Part shown: in pieces, positions 2,006-43,870 of the stretch
Numbering within the stretch: position 1 is the first letter of the stretch
How the letters are laid out: every line of letters begins with the position of its first letter
From: Oikopleura dioica
Lineage: Eukaryota > Animalia > Chordata
Assembly (NCBI GenBank): GCA_907165135.1
Contig: OU015567.1
Span: 7,068,001-7,132,000 of the forward strand
Direction of reading: 5' to 3'
Length of the DNA: 64,000 nt
Program-made: the position numbers and the translations under genes
Notes under the pieces: model-generated
Told to the model about the DNA's origin: nothing
What the model saw: only the letters and a program-made list of their open reading frames with translations
The model's database searches: none

Positions 2006-2491
2006 TGTAACTAATTTCCGGCTAAGCAAAGGCAGAATTCAGCACGAAATTAAAATTAGATGAGTCATAATCTCTTTGAAGCTCACTGTGAGTTATCTCC
2101 CTTCGTGTTGAAGGGTTGAAGAGGACCCCTTGAACTTGGAACTTGGTCGTAGTGGATCGAGGCGGCTGGGCGCTGAATCGCGGCGCTGTGAGTGGCGCGA
2201 GCGATCGACCAATCAGCGCGTCGCTTGCGCCCGCGTCCTCCAGCAGAGCCCGCCTACGTGTTTTCTTTCTGGGACGATCCACACTGCGAGTTTTGCCTCT
2301 GGACGAGCTCTCTGTCTCGCCACGGACTCGCCAGTGAGCTCCCTCTTTCTCTCTCTGTTCTCCCAGGCCCGGCACCTCTCTAAGGTGCTCCTGCCCAATT
2401 ACAAGCCCCCCTTTGTTAAAATAAAAAACAGCCATTTTTGGGACAAAAATCTAAAGAACACAAAACAGACTCCGCCGAAAGAGATTATACA
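2006..2491. mobile_element. Candidate solo LTR
   Basis: TGTAA...TATACA ends, internal GC-rich CCAAT region and AATAAA, flanked by GTTAC/GTAAC (5-bp repeat with one mismatch). Confidence 0.4.
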
Positions 2492-4776
2492 GTAACCCAA
2501 TACTGCCCAGAAGATTAACATAAGTGCCACAAACTGAATCTTTGAACGTTCAGCTATTGAGAGATACGCCCTTAAGAAAAGTGAAAATTGAGAAAGAAAA
2601 AAAGAATATAAGAAACAGAAAAATTTAATCAAAGGTATTTCTTTTGAGTTTTATGATTATGTAATACGTTTTTTGGCGAATCCCAGGAGGTGGAAGGCTA
2701 TATTTATGCAATAATAAAAATAATCGTTACGCCCATCACGATAGTTATTATTTTTGTCCTTTTTATTTCGAAAAGGGGCTAATTGTTTTTAACCCCTTTG
2801 AACCCGAATTGTACTGAAAACGTCTATTCGGCGATTTGCAGACTTTCAAAGAATTTTTTTTATTGAAGAAGGAATGTCAATTAGATTTTAATTTTGATTA
2901 AAAATCATTACAGTAAGAAAAATGCGGAAATAGTTGTTCAAATCTAAAGACGCAGATTGAATTCTATGACTAAATGATGAGTTTTCAGAAATAAGATACA
3001 GCCGCTCTTGGGAGCTTGATTTCTTGTTCGGAATTTAATCACCGCTTTTTCTAAATAGCTTAATTTAATTTGCTCGGCAGCTGATTACTGATTGTTATTT
3101 ATTCTTAGCCGTTTTTCTTTCAAGACAACATTCAAGTTCGCTTTTCTTTCGTTTTTTGGTTCCAGTAGTTTGAAATTAGCAAACGCAGCTGTTTCGTTTT
3201 GAGAGTTGCAAATGTGCGCATTTTTGGATTGAAACTTTTGCGCTCATATTTGAAACACTTTACGGCAGAATTCCAAAAACTTGAGAAAACTTTCACCCCG
3301 GGGCGATAGATGCTGAGGGCCTTACCCACCATTGACAGTCTCTCTTTTCCGAGTTCATCGTGGGCCACTTATCTGCAGTCGTATACTTCGGCCATGTAAT
3401 TTTCTGAGAAGGTATCAAAGGAATCCTTTGATGAAGTCACTCTGCTCGGAAACCTGTGTAGAAAACCTGAGTAAAGATTTGAGAGAGCTAAAATAGAAAG
3501 CCGCGTAGCGGCTTTTTTTAAACCGAACCCGCAAATTATTATGGGTTTCTCTGTAGTAATTTTGGCGAAGCCGCTTTGCGGCTTTCATTTTAGCTTTTTC
3601 AATATCCTGACTCAGGATTCCGGGCCTACGAATCAAAGGAGCCATAAAGTGTATTTGGCTCATTGATTTGGCTTCAATTTGGAAAAGTAACTCAGCCGCA
3701 GATCATAATTTAAAGAAAAGGAGTGACATTTTCATTCAAATGAATTTGCGCGCCAAAGAATTTTACGTCTCCCAGGAGCATAAATTCTACGTGATTACGC
3801 TTTTATCCTGAGTAAATGATAGGATCAGAAAGAAGCTCGGCTCAAATATTTATCGATCCCTCCGTGTTCTGAATTGATACAGTCACATTCCTACTGTCTG
3901 AAGCACAGACAGCTGGGGAATTGTTTCAGTATTGCTACAGTCTTTTTTTCGAAGTGTTCTTTGGTTTGGCGATGATTATTTATTGATCATTTTCAGATGT
4001 CTAAAGCTGCAGCAGTTTGAGAGGATCATCAGTCAATCCAGTTTTTTTGCAATCAAGGAGGAGTCAATCAAGACTGTTTTTGTCTGGGTTCTTTTTGTAG
4101 ACAAAAACAATCAGCTGCAGATTGTTCTTTCTAAGGCACAAAAATAACTGATGAAGAACAAGGTCGCTAATTAGTAATAAGCAAATTCGCAGCTTCGTTT
4201 CCTCGAATTCTTTGATGCTCATTTTGAAGGGAATAACTCATTCCGAATGATAAACGATAGTAAATTAAACTTTAATCAAAAACGTCATGGCTTCGAGAAG
4301 AAAGGTAGGATAAGGATATTCTTCTGAGGTTGGAGAACTGTCGCCACATCGGAGACACGCCGTAGGGCGAAAATCCCCGTTGATTGGCCACCAGAGTTTG
4401 ACAAGTGGCGTGTTTCACGATTGAAAAGAACCTTTTTTGAACCGCAGTTCAAATTCAAATTGACACTACTGCGAAAACGTTTTGACACTTATCTTTCCAG
4501 AATCAGAGGAGTTAATGTTATGACAAATCCTAAAGGAAATGGGCGCTTCCGAATCTCAAGATAGCTTCTTTTTTGCCTTTCAGGGAGATTTTTGGATCAT
4601 AGATTTCTCTTGAAAATGGCTGTAAATCGAAAAGCCGCTTGGGGCTTTGAGGGAAACCGAGCTCTTAGCGCGGTTTTTTTTTTTATAACTCTTTCTTCTA
4701 CCCTTTTCTTCTGCGATTCTTTACAGATATGCCTTTGCGTGATCAAACATTTGCGTTAATCTGCGGTTGCTTTCAG

Positions 4777-35335: not shown

Positions 35336-35800
35336 CCTCTCTTTTCCTTCTTCTTTTATTCAAGACGTTTCTTTTCTCTGCTCTGTTCCCACCGTGAATC
35401 AGAGCTTCCAAAAATTGATATATTGTTTGGCTTTTTGTCTTGCGCGTTACTCACAAAAAAAAAAGGTAAAAAATTAACTCGGGAGAATAACGATGCTGGC
35501 GCGAGTTGGTAATCGCGCGTTTCAAAGCTGCTGAGAAGCTCAAACTGAAGCTGACAAGGATTTTTATGATCGGATTGCGATCACAACAAAACAAAAGATC
35601 AACCGACAAGGACGTTACTTGAAAAGGCAGCCAAGCGAGAAGAAAAACGGAATAGCGAATAATATGCGCAAAAGACTGGACTTTTGAGCATATAGAAGAA
35701 ATTAATTTATTAAACATGTATTAGAAACAGAGATTGCGTGGTAGTTCTTGTAGCAGTACAAAAGAATGATAGTTGTACGAACAGAAAAATTGTTGTTTTT

Positions 35801-38800
35801 TTATCCTTTTTGAAGAAATTGAGTTGCTAGAATTGTCTCGTCCAGTTTTGCGCGGTCCTTTTCTTCCGCCAGTTTTTCGCGCAATCTCGATATTGCGGCG
35901 GGGAAAAGCTCTTCGGGAAAAGTGCTTGGTACAGGAAGATACAGTATGTAATGGCGGATGGAGTCACGGTCGTTTTCTACTGCGGAGATAAGGGAACTAG
36001 AAGAGAGTTTTCTTTTGGGAGGGTTTGGAGTGGTTATGTTACCAGATAATGATTTTGGACTGGCCACGGAACTTTTGGCAGATATTTGGAATAGCTAGCA
36101 AAAGCCAGTTGAAGATTTCATCTCGTTGAGGAAAAATACGGAAGCAGTCGCTCAGAAAGAATAAATATGAAGGAACCAGCGCTTCTTTTGCATTCATCAG
36201 TTCGATAAAGAGCTTATTTAAAACCCTAGAAAAAGATAGAATGTATAAAAAGGCAGATTGATTTGTACCTTTCATTGATTGAAATTTCGCTGAATAAGAG
36301 CTTCAAGAGAGCGAGCATTTTCGAAGAATGTTTCTTTGGATTGGTGACGGCGGAGTTCAGGATCACGGAAATTACGGGGTCGCTACCGATATCGCTCGAG
36401 TTCTTGTTTTTGATGAACGACGCGGAACGCTTTTTTGAGGAGAAATAGCAGCTAAAAACATATTAAACTGACCATAATTTGTCATGATCTTACAGAAGGG
36501 AACTCGTAGCAAGAGTAGAGCCAGTTGAAGCAAGATAGGAGTCGTTCGCCATGCTCAGATCAGCTCCTATCTGTGAAAACTGCACCACTTGGTCCGGAAG
36601 CAAATGTCCCAGCCACGCGATTCTGCCCAAACCGAGTAAAAGAGGTTCGACGGCTTCGAGGGAAGCCCCAGTGTAGCCGACTTGGCGATGATTGATATGA
36701 TGTTCGATGTAAAATCGACCTGTGCAGAGTTAGAATGAAAAGTTCAAGATATATTTCATTTTTGATATTAAACTCTTTCCTCGTCTGCGAAATCAGGGTG
36801 TCGCTCAATTATCAAAAGAGCGATGGAGAAGTCGTAGAGCTTGAGTTGCAAGTCGATAGGATTCAAGGACATCAATGATGGATGCGCGCTCAGTGAAGTG
36901 AGAACCTTATTTGCTATCAGCGTCAAGAAGTTACTGTAAGAAACAGTGAGCCCTCTTGGCATGTCTAGCAAATTCAGTACAGAGCTTCGGACACTAGAAG
37001 TTTTGTTACACTTTTGTAGATGTACCGAACTTACGATAAATCGGAGGAAATAGAACAAAAGCCTCGAGAAACAAGGGGCGTAAGAGTTTTTGTCAAAAAC
37101 TCATCGTTGTAGCCTGCGACAGATGCTGCCTTTGTCAAGCATGGCAACAGCGTTTCCCAAAGAAGAGGATCTTCGTTTTCTGGATTTGAAGTTTGAACAA
37201 GTCCAGTTACAGCTTTGAGAGTTTCGTTGAAGTGCTCTCTGGTTGGATAGGCGTTGACGATCATATTTATTGCTCTCGCTGCTTCCAATAGAACTCGTCG
37301 ATGAGGCGCTAAAATTTATGTTGAAATCATGTCAGAGAATACTTTAGTACCTTCGGAATTCTCATGAATAGCAAAATGAAACCACCGTAGAAACAAATCA
37401 AAAAGAAACTGCGTCGAAGAATTCAAATCTGGCGTCCAGGAATCATCTGATTTCTCCGAGGCCTCGAGCTCTATTTCTGCCGAGGAGCTTCTTGCACTTG
37501 TCATTGGCGAAATTCCTTGTTTCCTGAAATGATTTGGAGCGCATGAAGCTCCAACTGAAACTATCGATGGTCCCTGGGACTCGGGATTCGAAGACAGCCA
37601 AGGGGATGAGTTTTGTAACGACGAAGATAGGTCAGATTCAGCTTGCGCATCTAAAACCCGAGGAAGAGGACATCGAGGGTGGTTTATCAAGGGAGAGACA
37701 GCAGGTGAGCCCGCAAATGTCTTTCCATTTTGAAACTGGCGAAATGCGAGCATCGTGAGTACTGTTAATCCTCTAACAGCATCAACCATCGAGTCTATCT
37801 CTTCTTCGCGACCAGATCCAATGTTCAAATCGCTGGAAGTCTTGCTCATGATCACCTGTTGCAAGCCAGTCCACAGTGAGAGAAAGCACGTTCGAGTTCC
37901 ATAGCCAAACGCGCGAAAATTCCGAACTGATTGGGTGATTATTTCTTTATCTTCCAACTCGTTTGGCTCGCCAATTTCAGAAGCGAGAAGAGGCTTCCGG
38001 AAGAGCTCTTCTTTGCCGGGAGTATAGGAAAGAATCGATAGGATCTTCCGAACAAGGACGGAGTCAGGACAGTTCGATAGGAATGAAAAGGAGATTAAGC
38101 TGTCGATCCCGACCATGGAAAAGATTTCTTCAAGATTCTTGATTGTGTTATCGTAAATTTCATCATCCAAACAGTCAGTTTTGCAAAGATCATCAAAAAT
38201 ATTTGCTAGCTTCCTTCGTTTTCTGCTTTCTACAAGAAGCGTGGTATTCGATGAGCTTTTCTGATCGTTTTCTCCGACTTTGATGGAAAACGGACAGTCG
38301 AACATCGTTGAAATCTCGAGTCGTAATCGTCTTGAAGGAATAAGTTGTACGTATTTTCCGACCGTTTCTGCCCAGGCAACCTTGTTCATTGCTAAGAGTT
38401 TGACGAGCTTTCGGATAGCCCCGATTCTATTTCCCTCAAATGTCACTTTAACAAGATCTTCATCGACATTCACATCAGATTCGATGAGAGAAATCATGTG
38501 TCTTCTAACATACGCCGGTGCGCTGGAAAGACTGGACTTAAAGCTCGCTTGTTCTTCTTTCAGAAAATTCTTGAGTTTAGAACGAGTCCTCGTTGATTTC
38601 AATGCGGATTGAATCAAAAGTTCATCGCATGAAAAGGTTTCAAAATCAGAGTTGAAGATTTTAGCAAGTTTGGCACCGGTGTTATTGTAAGTTGAGTCCG
38701 ATGCGATGAAATTATTGTGAAGTCTGATGGCAGGACAAAAAGTGCTTTCAAGAGTCAAATCTGGAATGAGTTGAGATTCTGCGACGAGCTGCTGACGAGA

Positions 38801-41800
38801 AATATGCTGGATAAGAACAAGCGTTTCGAATTTTAAACTTTCATCAGAGTATTTCAGCAGCTCGGAGAAGATGCTTTTCATGTTGATTTTTGAAAGAATC
38901 CCGTGAAGATTTGATTGAGAAATAACTAGATGAAGAATCCCGAATAAAACCTTGCTGATCGCCGACGATTTATGCCTTTTCAAAGCAATCAAGGCATTGT
39001 CTAACATATCTTTGAACGAGTCTTCGTTTGCTTCTAGCACTCCTCCGGTACAGTGCTCGAAAACAACTCTTAGTAGCTCGAGCTCTTTTTTGTCCGAAAA
39101 TTTCAAATTCAGGACGAAATTTTCGATAAATAAATTTCCAGTAAAATTGTGGACGATTCTAGCACTCACACTTCTCCAGAGATTAATATCAGTGAGCCGA
39201 TAGTACTTGAGAATGTGAATCAACAGTGGAAAAGATGAGCAAGTAGTGGACATGTTCAGAATCATCGAAAGAATCACTTCTTTCTGCGCAGACTCGGAGA
39301 CTGTTTCAAGGGAGAAAATATCGTCGACAATCGGAGAAAGCGCTGGAATCGCATGTGTTTCGGGACTGAGCCCGGCTGCGTTGAGACTGTTGCATAGATT
39401 GATAACTTCTGACTTTGTAACAAAAGTCTTTGCGCCTCCCTTTTTCTCCCCGCTTAGAAGAACGAGGAAAAGAAAGATGCTCGGAATGACCATTTTTGCA
39501 TCTCGCCACAGGTTTGCTTCGGCGGTGCTCAATTGATTCAGCAAGATTTTCACGAAGATCCCTTCAGAATCCAGCAAAGAATAATTCACCCGAAGCTGCA
39601 TCAAATTAGTAAGAAGTTTTAGGACTGCTTTTTGAATACGCTCATCAGTAGAAACTGTATATCTTCGCATAGCACAGATGACGATCGGTTCGAATATTCG
39701 AATAAAGTCTTGAACTGATGATGATCCCTTTTTCGCGTTGAAGTTGATTTCTTGGAGCCGCGCGTCTACCATCTGTTTATACGATTTCTGATGGTTGAGT
39801 TCGCTTTCAGAGAGGTGTGAACCTGCCTGTGTTGTTGCTTGAGCATCCGTGAGCCGAAGAGATATCAAGGAAAGCGGAGTGTCCCTTAATTTCTCCACCA
39901 AATCAGCTTCGTACGATGATGGCAGCTGAGATTCATTGGGCGGTTGTTTGACTTGGAAAAGGGCAGAAAGCACGGAAGTCGCAGTGAAGATGCATTTCGA
40001 GGGCAAATCATCATAGGTTGATTGAAGAAGCCCAGTTAAAGACGTCAAGATGATCTCGGCGAATTCGGAAATGACCGAAAACTCGATGTTTTCCAGAAGA
40101 ATCTGCAAACTCTCAAGAACCCCTGATAGTAAATCTGATAGATTTGAAGACTTGGATGTTTGAATTTTTGAAGTTTGGTATGCTTGATTGACTTTTTTGT
40201 AGAACTCATGTTGGGGAACCTCGTCAGAGTTTTTCTCCAAGTCCACAACCGGCGAAGTAGCCTTTGGGACGTGCTCTTTTGGGCGAGAATTATTGAAAGG
40301 AATGGAGTTGCGGAGCTTTCTGGCAAAGCTTGGACTCGAGCCACGGACCTTCTGATCATCTTCTACCACCGGTAAAGTTCTTTTCTCCGATTCAAGGTTC
40401 AATAGTGCATCGATTTTTGCTTCAATCAAAACAATATGTAAAATTTTTAAATAGCGAACGATCAAATTCGCCAGTCGTTTTTGACCATCCAAGACCATTG
40501 CTGGTACAACTGGCTCTTTTAGCTGCAATGTTTGGGTCCACTTAACCATCAGTTTTGACGCTAACTTGAGCATTCTTCCTAAATACTGCCAGTCGACGAT
40601 TTCGCTGTAAATTTCGCAGGTTTGCAGAACGAAGAACAGGAGTGGAGGTGAAGGATGATCGAATTTCCGAACCCAAGTTTTTGCCGAAGGATACTTCTTT
40701 AACAAGATGAAGATTGCTCCACAAATAGAAGCAATTCTAGGTCCATCGACTGATTTTAACAACTCGTTAGTCATGAATGAAATGAACCATTCAGTAGACA
40801 GGTCGAAGGGTTCTTCAGTGGACTCCTCAAAGCAGTGGTTCACATATTTGGCGGTGATCAATTCTAATCTGTTGATTTCTGGCGAGTGGACTTTGTGAAT
40901 AGCTTTTGGCCCGTAGCAATTTTTGCTAAACGCGAAGGTGAACTTGAGACATCCTTCTCGAACCCGCTCGTCTTTTGAAGAGAGACACGCAAGAAAGTAT
41001 TCCAGGGCCCGTTCTTCGTATAGGAAAACATCTGCTTCTGGCGATAAGGCGTGAAAGAATCGCCAGTCTACTTCGGAGAGGCAGGAAACGAGATCGATTT
41101 GCGTTGACCAGTAAGTTACCGTTTTTGTCAGTTTCAAAATGTTTTCCACGGAAGAAATGTAAAGCTCTCCTTTCCGATGCTGGAGAAAGAAAGGGAGGAG
41201 ATTTCGAATTCCTTCAATTGCTTTCGACAAGGATTGGTTCGAAGAAGTCGTCGAAATGAAATTGATAATTTGCTCGAATTTGGATTTGACTCCATTTTCC
41301 TCGTGCTCATTTTTCATCAAGTTGGCAAGGAAGAGAACAGTGTGGCCTTGAAGATTCGGGTCTTCGTGCGAAAGAAGATCTTGAATTTTCGCCATAGAAG
41401 GGAGCGAAGAAATGGAGGGGCTCATTGAAACGCAGAAATTTGAAGCAGAAACGATGAGAGACTTGATTGAAACACGCGAAAGACCTGAAATTTGATCAGT
41501 TTGAAAGAGATCTTAATTTCGAACCTTTGTCAGGCAATAATTCTCCATCTTTGACGAGAAAAGTGGGCAAGAGATAGCTGCAGAGCTCTTCAATCGCATC
41601 TTGATCCAAATTTTTCGCGTTTTTGAGGAGTAAATTGACGAGTTCGAGCGAAATCAAAACTGTAGAATACGCGGGCTCTTCTTTCAAAATGTCCACGAGG
41701 GTTCGAATCAACTCAAAGTTCGAAGCGTAAGATTCTTCAAATTCTAGCAGTTTCTTCAGCGCTAGAATTATGGCGGGAAGAATGTCTCGCATTTCCGGGT

Positions 41801-42554
41801 CTTTGAGTTTTAAAAGAGAGCTTCGACGACTTCATTTTTCGCTGACTGTAATGAACGAGCATTTCGAGCGATTTCGCTGCAGATTCTCGGTTAGACGGAG
41901 AAATAAGTGGCTTGGAAGTGATCTTCGCGATGAGCGTCGTTTCCAGATCTTTGAAATCTGCTTCGGTGAAGACATGACCCAGGGATCGAACTAGATTCAT
42001 TGTCGCATCTGACAGGACTTGTTGGACGCTTTCTTCTTTGCTCGAAATCAGTCGGTTTAAAATTGGAACGATGTGCTGGGCGAATGGCTTGCTTTTTTGC
42101 GGTTTAATCGAGCTGGAAAGATTGGAGAAACGCATGAGAAGCTGCTTGACTCGCTTGAGTGTCTTGTCATCCCAGTTTTCCAACGGAAGATTGACGGTTT
42201 TCTGTAGGTCCTTGAAGAGAATGTAGCGGAAACGAGGGAGAATATTTTCGGGAAGGAATTGGGTCAGTTGATTTAGCGCGTCGCTGGAACCTTGACGAAC
42301 GTCACGTGAGTTGTCTTCGCAGAGAAGAAGCAGAAATTCTAGCACAATAGTTATGAAAAAACCACCGTTAGGGACATACCTATGCATGAATTTAAATTCA
42401 ATGTAAGCTGCTGATCCGGAAGGAGCAAAAGATTCTCGACCATGTTCTTCGCATTCTGGCATTTTTCTTTAGGGCTCATTTGGTGCCGATTAGTGTTTTT
42501 GGAGGCGTCGAAATGCAGCCGAAACTGCGCCAAGTTCTTTTGGACCGACTCCAT
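35801..42554 (-). CDS. HTT: Huntingtin, ~10 exons including a ~4.1-kb exon, ~2,100 aa
   Basis: EFLLLLCEDNSRDVR...IKPQKSKPF...EESVQQVL matches HTT N-HEAT; LLSHEDPNLQG, DFIRIFEPIVICAMRRYTVSTDERIQKAVLKLLTNLMQLRVNYSLLDSEGIFVKILLNQ and the C-terminal VLNKLFIEL...NWLLLAIPN match HTT. Confidence 0.93.
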
Positions 42555-42689
42555 TTTAATTTCATCTCAATTTCGAAGCATCTGAAAAGGTAACAAATAT
42601 GTAAAGGAATTAGTTGATAGATATAATGATAATTTTTCAAGATATTCGTAAAATTTATATCACGAATCATAACAACAAAGTTATTCTAT

Positions 42690-43870
42690 GAGCTTCATTT
42701 TATGCAGAGTTGGAAGGGCCTCATCACGGTGTATGATGCATGCAGTAAGGAACATGGATATAGCTTCATTTTATATTTATACTTTAGTAGAATTATTTTT
42801 CATTAACATTTTTATTTCTGGGGACAAGTTCATCTTCAGGTTGTACGATGCACCATGGGGCTAATATGTATCTTGCTTCATTTTATTCAATTAAATTCAT
42901 ATTTCTCGCGTCGATTTCAATTATCTGAAAACAAATTGTAAGTAAAAGAAGAGTTAAATTAATAGACCTTTATTGAATAAATTTAATTAGACGTTGCCTT
43001 ATGCATTTATGCACTAATTTTGATAAAGCTTCATTTTACGTAGATTTGAATTTAGAAAAGTAACAGTTTACATGCACAATGCACCACGGGAGTATAATTG
43101 AAGAAGATTCATTTTATGTAGAGTAGAAAGAATTCGAGATGTATAATGCATCTGGTAAGCAATATGGATAGAGCTTCATTTTATTAAGTATAATAATAAT
43201 TCAAGTATAATTTAAATTAAAGTTGTTTAATACACCTCGCATCAAACCTAGATATTGATTCATTTCAAAGAAATTATATTATTTTTACTCTAATCTACGG
43301 GCAGTTTGTTGTTCGAATACATTTTAATAATTCTTCATTTTCATTTATTCATTTTTTCGAAACGATTCCAACCATCTGAAAATAAAAGAAGATACACTTA
43401 AGTTTCAAATTCAAACATTTGATATTCATTTGAGCAGTTAACACAGTTGAAATAGCACTGACTTATTTTACAATCTTCCATGCAGTATGCATATTGGAGC
43501 TCTTTTAGCTTCATTTTATTTAGAATTTATTAGTTAAATGAGAATAAATAGTTGCTATATGCATGCAGGGGCGATTTTGGATCTCGTTTCATTTTATAAT
43601 AAAATTTTTATTTCTTATATTTTTGAATAGCAATATTTTCATTTATAAAGAAGTTGTCTGATGCATGCGACATCTAATATGGATAATGATTCATTTTAAA
43701 TTCATCGAGTCGATTTCAACAATCTAAAAGTAGAATACGATATTCATCATTCAATTCTCGACTCAAGAATCTCGAGTCAATTCCATCGAGAATTTGTTTT
43801 CGTAACAAAAATTTATTTCATTTTTTCTCAACATTCAAAAGTACACTCCGAATTTGGCTTCATTTTAAGA
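42690..43870. repeat. Degenerate array of ~13 G(C/A/T)TTCATTTT motifs, most paired with ATGCA 27 bp upstream
   Basis: ATGCA/GnTTCATTTT pairs at 42736/42763, 42848/42875, 43001/43028, 43079/43106, 43146/43173, 43559/43586, 43661/43688 (all 27 bp apart) and 43480/43508 (28 bp). Confidence 0.85.

What the first reader, a model, noticed from the sequence alone, without database searches (positions are those of the whole stretch)
35801..42554. Naturally minimal huntingtin: ~2,100 aa, no polyQ/polyP, central disordered loop absent
The N-terminus MESVQKNLAQFRLHF resembles N17 and is followed by DASKNTNRHQ, with no Q run. Sequence equivalent to human ~aa 395 (SLELVNLLLKN) runs within ~20 residues into sequence equivalent to ~aa 665-700 (FLVKDGELLPDKGLSRVSIKS). 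So the ~aa 400-660 loop carrying S421 and caspase sites 513/552/586 appears deleted. The gene is 6.75 kb with ~10 exons, one of 4.1 kb, versus 67 exons in human. It is a natural test of the essential HTT core. The alignment is from memory.
Basis: partly seen in the sequence, partly recalled or inferred. Interest (0 to 1): 0.7.

Follow-up and report, generated by a model that had tools for sequence, protein, structure and literature searches.

The report
Compact huntingtin gene of Oikopleura dioica
This is the single huntingtin gene of the tiny-genomed tunicate Oikopleura dioica: a shrunken (~2,100 aa) but selectively maintained version that lacks the polyglutamine tract and the large disordered loop, and has a much-reduced middle 'bridge' domain.

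Summary
Window 42554..35801 (minus strand) is the only huntingtin (HTT) locus of Oikopleura dioica, Okinawa assembly. GenBank holds it as an unnamed 2,059-aa CDS (P0001).

- **Family:** Pfam, PDB sequence search, HHalign and AlphaFold/structure comparison all identify HTT.
- **Loop:** about 14 residues, with a predicted 5-residue turn, stand where human ~389-688 lies (150-250 aa in most animals). In two related lineages the DKG|LSRV junction is uninterrupted DNA, so no hidden exon can restore the loop.
- **Start:** The annotated start is 37 codons too short.
- **Selection:** dN/dS is 0.11 between the two relatives.

Caveats:
- Lack of polyQ/polyP is already known for Ciona.
- An unidentified mite-like clade (2,222-aa HTT) has also lost the loop.
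- Two annotated introns look like patches over 1-nt assembly gaps.
- RNA reads gave nothing, and HAP40 presence could not be tested.

The scan had not met this on other DNA. Verdict: a new variant of a known kind, of moderate interest.

The parts
35801..42554 (-). Whole HTT coding region, ATG 42554 to TAA 35803-35801. It is the only HTT locus in the genome.
   Evidence: ORFs and translation. P0001 is 100% identical to it. A PF12372 scan of G000 finds one locus only.
42555..42583 (-). Conserved 5' leader just downstream of a candidate (trans-)splice acceptor AG (42583-42582). It holds a TCGAAATTGA motif and upstream ATGs at 42581 and 42565, the second out of frame and overlapping the main ATG.
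   Evidence: Three-lineage DNA alignment: similarity starts here and is lost further 5'. The function is inferred only.
42510..42554 (-). N17-like N-terminal peptide MESVQKNLAQFRLHF
   Evidence: It aligns to MAxxEKLxKAFExLKxF of other animals with the Lys invariant. It is conserved as MDSVQKNLAQFRLHF in L001 and L002. The first 37 codons show 9 synonymous against 6 non-synonymous codon differences.
42380..42554 (-). Exon 1 (N17-like peptide, 11-aa linker with no Q or P run, start of the first HEAT helix). The annotated CDS starts only at 42443.
42339..42379 (-). Intron 1 (41 nt, GT..AG), at the same position in L001 and L002
41801..41846 (-). Annotated 46-nt 'intron 2', probably not real. In L001 and L002 this stretch is coding (SQRK..LQALF..L). 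The Okinawa assembly lacks one base in the A5 run 41839-41835 and one in the T4 run 41815-41812.
   Evidence: Not verifiable with reads.
41577..41618 (-). Site of the lost disordered loop. P0001 247-260 (AKNLDQDAIEELCS) stands for human ~389-688.
   Evidence: MSA. The AF2 model shows helix 230-246, a 5-residue turn, then helix 252-267, at pLDDT about 80.
41485..41524 (-). Intron 3 (40 nt, GT..AG, 30% GC) between ..LLPDKG and LSRVSIKS... It is specific to the Okinawa lineage.
   Evidence: Exactly these 40 nt are absent from L001 and L002, which read GAT AAA GGA CTC TCx CGT without interruption.
37351..41484 (-). Giant exon 4 (4,134 nt; P0001 279-1655)
38873..39739 (-). Most conserved HTT core (P0001 860-1148 = human 1413-1702, the end of N-HEAT)
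   Evidence: phmmer against PDB HTT chains, E 2.5e-37. Pfam PF12372, E 1.9e-48. Three-way identity among Oikopleura lineages is 0.86.
38408..38872 (-). Bridge-equivalent segment (P0001 1149-1303, about 155 aa against human 1703-2111, 409 aa). It is fast-evolving and has no detectable homology.
   Evidence: No PF20925 hit. HHalign found nothing. AF2 pLDDT is below 50. Three-way identity is 0.45. The 3' boundary comes from a VIA alignment that lies in the low-confidence part of the model.
35804..38407 (-). C-HEAT domain (P0001 1304-2059), spread over the end of exon 4 and the small 3' exons
   Evidence: HHalign prob 99.2%, E 2.6e-19 for P0001 1452-2050. Foldseek top hit is the human HTT C-HEAT 8sah_A, E 1.9e-11. 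VIA Z 20.3 against 6x9o_A 2112-3126.
36571..36632 (-). Annotated 62-nt 'intron' (GC 0.55), probably not real. It is coding in L001 and L002 (..PLEAVEPLLLGSGRLAWLGHLLPDQVVQFSQ..). The Okinawa assembly lacks one base at the C run 36662-36660.
35706..35711 (-). AATAAA polyadenylation signal about 90 nt after the stop, conserved in L001

Best explanation
This is the single-copy huntingtin (HTT) orthologue of Oikopleura dioica (Okinawa lineage), compacted like the rest of this genome.

**Shown:**
- The protein is about 2,096-2,133 aa, against 3,144 aa in human and about 2,950-3,040 aa in Ciona.
- It keeps an N17-like N-terminal peptide.
- It keeps an N-HEAT solenoid that superposes on human residues 108-1705.
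- It keeps the ultra-conserved core (human 1413-1702).
- It keeps a C-HEAT solenoid that superposes on human 2112-3126.
- It has no polyQ or proline-rich tract.
- The disordered loop (human ~389-688, with S421 and the caspase/calpain cleavage cluster) is replaced by about 14 residues that form a short inter-helix turn.
- The bridge plus proximal C-HEAT (human 1703-2441, 739 aa) is reduced to about 305 rapidly evolving residues without recognisable homology.
- The gene has 9-11 exons with 40-60-nt introns, one of them a 4.1-kb exon.
- It is under purifying selection.

**Inferred:**
- It works as other HTTs are thought to: a large HEAT-repeat scaffold whose two solenoid lobes form the interaction platform.
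- The regulatory appendages (polyQ/PRD, and the loop's phosphorylation and proteolysis sites) are dispensable in this lineage.
- Whether it still clamps a HAP40 partner across a reduced bridge is unknown.
For: - **Family:** Pfam PF20926 E 2e-24 and PF12372 E 1.9e-48. phmmer against PDB HTT chains, E 2.5e-37, collinear with human 129-284, 689-730, 825-880, 1413-1702 and 2442-2544.
- **Organism and annotation:** P0001 is 100% identical.
- **Copy number:** one locus in the genome.
- **Loop:** 18 residues lie between the two conserved anchors, against 150-251 in most of the 36 aligned HTTs. The junction is contiguous DNA in L001 and L002. AF2 places a 5-residue turn there at pLDDT about 80.
- **N-HEAT:** VIA Z about 25, with 970 residues aligned to human 108-1704 at 24% identity.
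- **C-HEAT:** HHalign 99.2%. Foldseek E 1.9e-11 for HTT against 3.6e-4 for the best non-HTT chain. VIA Z 20.3.
- **Start codon:** conservation begins at ATG 42554.
- **Selection:** dN/dS 0.11 for L001 against L002. For Okinawa against the others, pN is 0.17 and pS is saturated at 0.77.
Against: - No transcript evidence was obtained. RNA runs labelled with the species name gave 0-2 partial reads at 90-95% likeness, probably because they come from a different cryptic lineage.
- The Okinawa assembly has three 1-nt gaps relative to the conserved reading frame. If these are real, the gene is either spliced oddly or damaged in this lineage.
- The bridge is not detectable by Pfam or HHalign and is poorly modelled, so a three-domain HTT architecture is not demonstrated.
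- HAP40 presence was not tested.
- The N17 resemblance rests on 15 residues, and a hydrophobic-moment test could not discriminate.
Confidence: 0.88

Rival explanations
1. The 'missing loop' is an artefact of mis-assembly or mis-annotation, with exons skipped by the gene predictor. The real protein would carry an ordinary disordered loop.
For: The annotated model is demonstrably imperfect. The start is 37 codons short, and two introns are doubtful.
Against: Between the two flanking helices there are only 42 nt of coding DNA. The nearest intron is 40 nt long. Two independently assembled metagenome contigs of related lineages (L001, L002) have the same short junction inside one uninterrupted ORF of at least 1,580 codons.
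Confidence: 0.02
2. In the Okinawa lineage the gene is a recent pseudogene or is decaying. The three 1-nt frame breaks are real mutations, and the predictor bridged them with invented introns.
For: There are three single-base gaps relative to the frame kept in L001 and L002, at 41839-41835, 41815-41812 and 36662-36660. No RNA reads were laid.
Against: All three gaps sit in homopolymer runs (A5, T4, C3), the typical residual error of a Nanopore-based assembly. Codon-by-codon similarity to the relatives continues through and beyond each break. The remaining ~6.3 kb has no stop codon. pN to the relatives is only 0.17 while pS is saturated.
Confidence: 0.07
3. The protein is HTT-derived but functionally remodelled. 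With the bridge reduced to a short, fast-evolving linker, it no longer binds HAP40 and acts as two loosely tethered HEAT solenoids, or has a changed role.
For: The bridge domain is undetectable. The bridge-equivalent and proximal C-HEAT segments are the least conserved parts among Oikopleura lineages, at 0.40-0.45 identity against 0.73-0.95 elsewhere. AF2 confidence there is below 50. A SNAP-family scan of the genome turned up no HAP40-like gene, but that test is weak.
Against: N-HEAT and C-HEAT are both retained, collinear and under strong constraint. In the published survey, HTT and HAP40 co-occur across unikonts almost without exception (PMC7725122). Failure to find a very divergent 40-kDa TPR protein without a proper query says little.
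Confidence: 0.2

Closest known systems
Human huntingtin (HTT; PDB 6EZ8, 6X9O, 8SAH)
   Same: The order of N-HEAT, core and C-HEAT is the same. The core, human 1413-1702, aligns at E 2.5e-37. Both solenoids superpose: Z about 25 for human 108-1705 and Z 20.3 for human 2112-3126. An N17-like N-terminus is present.
   Different: It is about 1,000 aa shorter. It has no polyQ or proline-rich region. The disordered loop ~389-688 is absent, so S421 and the caspase sites 513/552/586 have no counterpart. The bridge plus proximal C-HEAT is 739 aa in human and about 305 aa here, with no detectable homology. The gene has 9-11 exons against 67.
Ciona intestinalis / C. savignyi huntingtin (Gissi et al. 2006, PMC1636649; P0162/P0019)
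   Same: It is a tunicate HTT that also lacks polyQ and polyP. The motif ELLPDK..RVS.K after the loop is shared.
   Different: Ciona HTT is 2,946-3,038 aa with 61 exons. It keeps a loop of about 230-250 aa and the Pfam bridge and C-HEAT domains. In the tree, O. dioica sits on a very long branch and does not group with Ciona.
Compact intron-less HTT of an unidentified mite-like clade (P0082 2,222 aa, P0172 2,239 aa, P0173 2,273 aa; L012:2035-8703)
   Same: The size class is similar. The disordered loop is also absent: 13 residues lie between human 392 and 682 equivalents (6EZ8 numbering), and both flanks align significantly.
   Different: It keeps a canonical N17 (MASIEKLVKSLDALKF) and all four Pfam HTT domains, including the bridge (E 4.5e-38) and C-HEAT (E 1e-58). 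It groups with an acariform mite, not with Oikopleura, so the loop loss is convergent.

Membership tests
Huntingtin (HTT) family | N-terminal HEAT block 1 (Pfam PF20926 Htt_N-HEAT_1) | tested here: met
   E 2e-24, 87 bits against a cut-off of 31.2, covering the full HMM 1-151. It aligns to human 129-284.
Huntingtin (HTT) family | N-HEAT domain (Pfam PF12372) including the conserved core (human 1413-1702) | tested here: met
   E 1.9e-48, though only HMM positions 460-830 match. phmmer to human HTT gives E 2.5e-37. The AF2 model superposes on human 108-1705 at Z about 25 with 970 residues aligned.
Huntingtin (HTT) family | Bridge domain (Pfam PF20925; human 1685-2091) | tested here: not met
   No hit at E<=1 on the protein or at E<=10 in the whole genome. 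An HHalign profile of three Oikopleura lineages found nothing. About 155 helical residues at low pLDDT occupy the position.
Huntingtin (HTT) family | C-HEAT domain (Pfam PF20927; human 2092-3098) | tested here: met
   Pfam alone is below threshold (E 0.37). HHalign gives 99.2%, E 2.6e-19 over 572 columns to the C-terminus. Foldseek's top hit is 8sah_A at E 1.9e-11. VIA gives Z 20.3 with 626 residues aligned to human 2112-3126.
Huntingtin (HTT) family | Single-copy orthologue, with HTT proteins as the best matches in other animals | tested here: met
   There is one locus in G000. An exhaustive phmmer returns full-length HTTs of Myxine, Ciona, Branchiostoma and Saccoglossus as the best long hits.
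Huntingtin (HTT) family | N17 amphipathic N-terminal helix | tested here: inconclusive
   It aligns with the N17 consensus and the Lys is invariant. It is conserved in three lineages. It is only 15 aa long, and the hydrophobic-moment test did not discriminate even for bona fide N17s.
Huntingtin (HTT) family | Obligate partner HAP40 (F8A) present in the same genome | not testable with these tools
   No HAP40 sequence could be obtained by reference, and there is no Pfam model for it. A SNAP-family (PF14938) scan gave alpha-SNAP, a SNAP paralogue, gamma-SNAP, a TPR protein and SYF1; of the two ambiguous candidates checked against the PDB, neither matched HAP40.
Vertebrate-type HTT (polyQ-bearing) | PolyQ tract followed by a proline-rich region after N17 | tested here: not met
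   The longest Q run and the longest P run are both 2. The residues after N17 are DASKNTNRHQ. Ciona is the same (PMC1636649).

The most novel reading that the evidence does not exclude
O. dioica HTT may be a natural 'two-lobe' huntingtin. It would work without the disordered loop, without a canonical bridge domain and possibly without HAP40. That would show that only the N-HEAT and C-HEAT solenoids, with the 1413-1702 core, are the indispensable unit of HTT in a chordate that can be reared and genetically manipulated in the laboratory.
Probability: 0.2. Interest if true: 0.7.

Novelty: new variant of a known kind. Interest (0 to 1): 0.45.

Why it matters
HTT's normal function, and which parts of the 3,144-aa protein are needed for it, remain unsettled. 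The disordered loop carries most of the studied phosphorylation and proteolysis sites, and it is thought to communicate with exon 1 (PMC8654980).

A chordate HTT under clear purifying selection lacks polyQ/PRD and the whole loop, and has a much-reduced bridge. This shows that these parts are dispensable for whatever conserved role keeps the gene. It also marks the N-HEAT, core and C-HEAT as the constrained unit.

The independent loss of the loop in a second compact-genome lineage strengthens that inference. In practice this offers a smaller natural template for structural work, and for rescue experiments in HTT-null cells or flies. It also raises a direct question: is HAP40 co-dependence universal?

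The finding is not a great surprise, given Oikopleura's general compaction and the poor conservation of the loop.

Tried and rejected
- **RNA support:** Read laying over 36720-42719 with three oligo-dT RNA-seq runs and one single-cell run labelled with the species gave 0-2 partial reads at 90-95% likeness. The lineages differ by about 27% at the DNA level, so these runs are most likely from another cryptic species. This is no test of expression, introns or the 5' end.
- **HAP40 orthologue:** no HAP40 sequence was available by reference. A PF14938 (SNAP) scan of G000 gave five loci. By reading their exons, I judged them to be alpha-SNAP, a divergent SNAP paralogue (C2:9.58 Mb), gamma-SNAP (C2:12.47 Mb), a TPR protein (C4:2.76 Mb) and SYF1/XAB2 (C1:8.84 Mb). 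The two ambiguous ones were searched against the PDB and neither matched HAP40. Inconclusive.
- **Bridge homology:** Pfam at relaxed E-values, HHalign with a three-lineage profile and the protein-language-model atlas (generic helical-repeat neighbours with low recognition) all failed.
- **Hydrophobic moment of the N17-like peptide:** uninformative, because real N17s are not distinguishable from shuffles either.
- **Independent Okinawa-lineage DNA across the first frame break:** an exact-pattern scan of metagenome contigs gave no match.
- **Word-index search with the conserved core:** it found only nine proteins. The exhaustive search was needed to judge 'minimal'.
- **Joined spliced model:** I did not build or search a self-joined model with the upstream start or corrected frames. 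The database protein P0001 and exon-by-exon references were used instead, so the 37 N-terminal residues and the ~37 residues hidden in the two doubtful introns are absent from the AF2 models.
Full report
**What is there.** The minus strand from 42554 to 35801 carries a chain of open frames. They are joined by 40-60-nt GT..AG introns and include one 1,369-codon ORF.
- Pfam finds Htt_N-HEAT_1 (E 2e-24) in the second exon and Htt_N-HEAT (E 1.9e-48) in the giant exon.
- The word-index protein search returns a 100%-identical GenBank/UniRef entry, P0001. It is 2,059 aa, named only 'Oidioi.mRNA.OKI2018_I69.chr2.g5920.t1', from Oikopleura dioica.
- P0001 maps onto the window as 11 exons.
- Scans of the whole assembly with the HTT Pfam models find this locus and no other.
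- In the searchable literature no paper describes O. dioica HTT. Gissi et al. 2006 only speculate that it might be trans-spliced.

Every quoted peptide is present, and the coordinates of start and stop are exact.
- phmmer against PDB chains aligns the protein collinearly with human HTT: P0001 19-187 to human 129-284, 261-301 to 689-730 (weak on its own), 363-419 to 825-880, 860-1148 to 1413-1702 (E 2.5e-37) and 1454-1558 to 2442-2544.
- To judge the loop and the word 'minimal' I ran the exhaustive representative search. I then named the hits: Myxine, Ciona savignyi, Branchiostoma, Saccoglossus, Helobdella and others.
- In an L-INS-i alignment of 15 full-length HTTs, LISLELVNLLLKNA aligns with the conserved ..ALELLQQLL.. 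helix. IEELCSYLLPTFLVKDGELLPDKGLSRVSIKSL aligns with ..VHCVRLL..FLL.G...L.PD..VRVSVKAL...
- Only about 7 unaligned residues lie between these blocks in Oikopleura, against 218-232 in the four deuterostomes examined.
- Measured between fixed anchors in 36 HTTs, the interval is 18 residues in O. dioica, 150-251 in most animals, about 80-90 in rotifers and 28 in P0082.
- The human segment without a counterpart is about 389-688. It contains the cryo-EM-invisible IDR that follows the first HEAT block, aa 98-406 (PMC8654980).

**Could hidden exons restore the loop?** No.
- The 84 nt of exon 3 from the end of the SLELVNLLLKN helix to the donor site (41608-41525) are all coding. The next intron is 40 nt (41524-41485).
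- Two metagenome contigs carry the same gene from two other Oikopleura-like lineages, at about 72-73% nucleotide identity over the whole gene: L001 (ENA, 11.9 kb) and L002 (JGI, 7.5 kb).
- In both, exons 2-4 form one uninterrupted ORF (P0003 and P0002). The DKG|LSRV junction is contiguous DNA, and exactly the 40 nt of the Okinawa intron are missing.
- This also shows that intron 3 differs between cryptic lineages.

**N-terminus.** Sequence similarity among the three lineages begins a few bases upstream of ATG 42554 and is lost further 5'.
- The 37 codons between this ATG and the annotated start (42443) differ by 9 synonymous and 6 non-synonymous codon changes between Okinawa and L001.
- The peptide reads M(E/D)SVQKNLAQFRLHF in all three.
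- Aligned with other animals, the peptide matches the N17 consensus MAxxEKLxKAFExLKxF, with the Lys invariant and hydrophobic positions mostly conserved.
- Homology is likely from position and pattern, but 15 residues cannot prove it. A hydrophobic-moment test was uninformative.
- DASKNTNRHQ follows the peptide, where amphioxus and Saccoglossus have QQ and mammals have polyQ-polyP.
- The longest Q run and the longest P run in the protein are both 2.
- This absence is already documented for Ciona, whose HTT is 2,946 aa with 61 exons (PMC1636649). It is a tunicate trait, not a novelty.

**Where the other ~700 missing residues went.** Using the phmmer and structural anchors, the budget (human against Oikopleura, full numbering) is as follows.

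| Segment (human numbering) | Human (aa) | Oikopleura (aa) |
|---|---|---|
| N-terminus to first HEAT | 128 | 55 |
| 285-688 | 404 | 73 |
| 689-1412 | 724 | 599 |
| 1413-1702 (core) | 290 | 289 |
| 1703-2111 (bridge) | 409 | ~155 |
| 2112-2441 | 330 | ~150 |
| 2442-3144 | 703 | 606 |

- The loop region is the largest single deletion. The bridge plus proximal C-HEAT together lose even more, about 434 aa.
- Pfam does not detect the bridge or C-HEAT.
- HHalign of P0001 1150-2059 against a 33-species alignment of HTT C-halves gives 99.2% probability (E 2.6e-19) for P0001 1452-2050, reaching the very C-terminus.
- Nothing is detected for 1150-1451, even with a three-lineage profile.
- That segment is also the least conserved among the Oikopleura lineages, at 0.40-0.45 three-way identity against 0.73-0.95 elsewhere.

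**Structure.** Two AF2 models were made from alignments of 36-42 sequences.
- The N-part (P0001 1-1150, mean pLDDT 74) shows helix 230-246, a 5-residue turn and helix 252-267 at the loop site, with pLDDT about 80.
- The N-part superposes on human HTT 108-1705 with Z about 25, 970 aligned residues and 24% identity. The high rmsd of 12 Å reflects solenoid curvature. The next non-HTT chain scores Z 17.9.
- The C-part (P0001 1150-2059, mean pLDDT 66) is confident from about residue 210 onward.
- Its best Foldseek hit is the human C-HEAT domain 8sah_A (E 1.9e-11), against 3.6e-4 for the best non-HTT chain.
- VIA aligns model residues 155-910 with human 2112-3126 (Z 20.3, 626 residues, 5.1 Å).
- The first ~210 residues of this model are helical but below pLDDT 50, so the shape of the bridge equivalent is unknown.
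- Some disordered loops remain (P0001 643-688, 791-866 and about 1552-1622). The protein is compact, not stripped of all disorder.

**Is it functional?** The evidence points to yes.
- Between L001 and L002 the big ORF has dN/dS 0.11. Okinawa against either has pN 0.17 with pS saturated at 0.77.
- All 3' exons are open and conserved in the relatives.
- The Okinawa assembly has three single-base gaps relative to the conserved frame, each in a homopolymer: A5 at 41839-41835, T4 at 41815-41812 and C3 at 36662-36660.
- The annotated 46-nt and 62-nt 'introns' (41846-41801, and 36632-36571 at GC 0.55) skip sequence that is coding in both relatives.
- Residual assembly errors patched by the gene predictor are the simplest reading. 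I could not check this, because the one reads call returned nothing useful and a metagenome pattern scan was blank.

**Is it unique?** No.
- P0082 is a 2,222-aa HTT encoded by one intron-less ORF on a 14.6-kb Logan contig (L012). Its relatives are 2,239 and 2,273 aa.
- P0082 has all four Pfam HTT domains and a canonical N17.
- It aligns to human 231-392 and then directly to 682-874 (6EZ8 numbering) with 13 residues between.
- In a FastTree it groups with an acariform mite, far from Oikopleura.
- Loss of the loop has therefore happened at least twice in compact genomes.
- Among the hits inspected, the other proteins under 2,300 aa whose domain content or hit coordinates I examined are truncated models. 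O. dioica is therefore the shortest apparently complete HTT seen, by about 100 aa.
- Only the best 150 of 228 representatives were listed.

**Not done.**
- HAP40 could not be searched properly, because no query sequence was available by reference. A SNAP-family scan found only SNAP paralogues, a TPR protein and SYF1.
- I did not submit a self-joined spliced model to any tool. P0001 and exon-wise references were used.

**Verdict.** This is a real, correctly read feature: a strongly compacted but constrained HTT orthologue. It is a new variant of a known family. Its value lies in showing which parts of HTT a chordate can do without, and in raising the question of what happened to the bridge and HAP40.

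Noticed in passing
window 41801-41846 and 36571-36632 (frame breaks at 41839-41835, 41815-41812, 36662-36660): Two annotated introns of P0001 skip sequence that is coding and codon-wise conserved in two related lineages. The Okinawa assembly lacks one base in each of three homopolymer runs. These are probably assembly indels patched by the gene predictor. About 37 residues are then missing from the database protein.
   Followed up: partly
window 42443-42554: The database CDS starts at the second in-frame ATG (42443). Conservation in three lineages shows the true start is ATG 42554, which adds the N17-like peptide.
   Followed up: yes
window 42555-42583: The 5' leader is conserved (TCGAAATTGA motif) after a possible trans-splice acceptor AG. 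An out-of-frame upstream ATG overlaps the main start in all three lineages, and a 4-codon uORF is present in two of them. This recalls the translational uORF reported for mammalian HTT (cited in PMC1636649).
   Followed up: no
window 41485-41524 versus L001 and L002: This 40-nt intron is present in the Okinawa lineage and precisely absent in two other Oikopleura-like lineages. It is a clean case of intron gain or loss between cryptic species.
   Followed up: partly
window 36774-36779: The annotated donor of exon 6 is non-canonical (GA). A canonical GT (GC in L002) 6 nt downstream is shared by the relatives and would add the residues ER.
   Followed up: no
L012:2035-8703 (Logan SRR6787386); relatives P0172, P0173: An intron-less 2,222-aa HTT from an unidentified organism groups with an acariform mite. 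It has all four Pfam HTT domains, but the disordered loop is reduced to about 13 residues. This is a convergent compaction.
   Followed up: partly
window 36720-42719 against runs X1, X4-X6: RNA runs labelled with the same species name do not map at >=90% identity. The three gene copies differ by about 27% in DNA, with saturated synonymous sites. This fits deeply diverged cryptic species under one name.
   Followed up: partly
G000:C2:9581128-9581848 (L005): There is a third, divergent SNAP-family gene beside alpha-SNAP (C1:4.586 Mb) and gamma-SNAP (C2:12.47 Mb). It keeps the LLKYSAK and YPAF.D.RE motifs, so I read it as a SNAP paralogue, not HAP40.
   Followed up: partly
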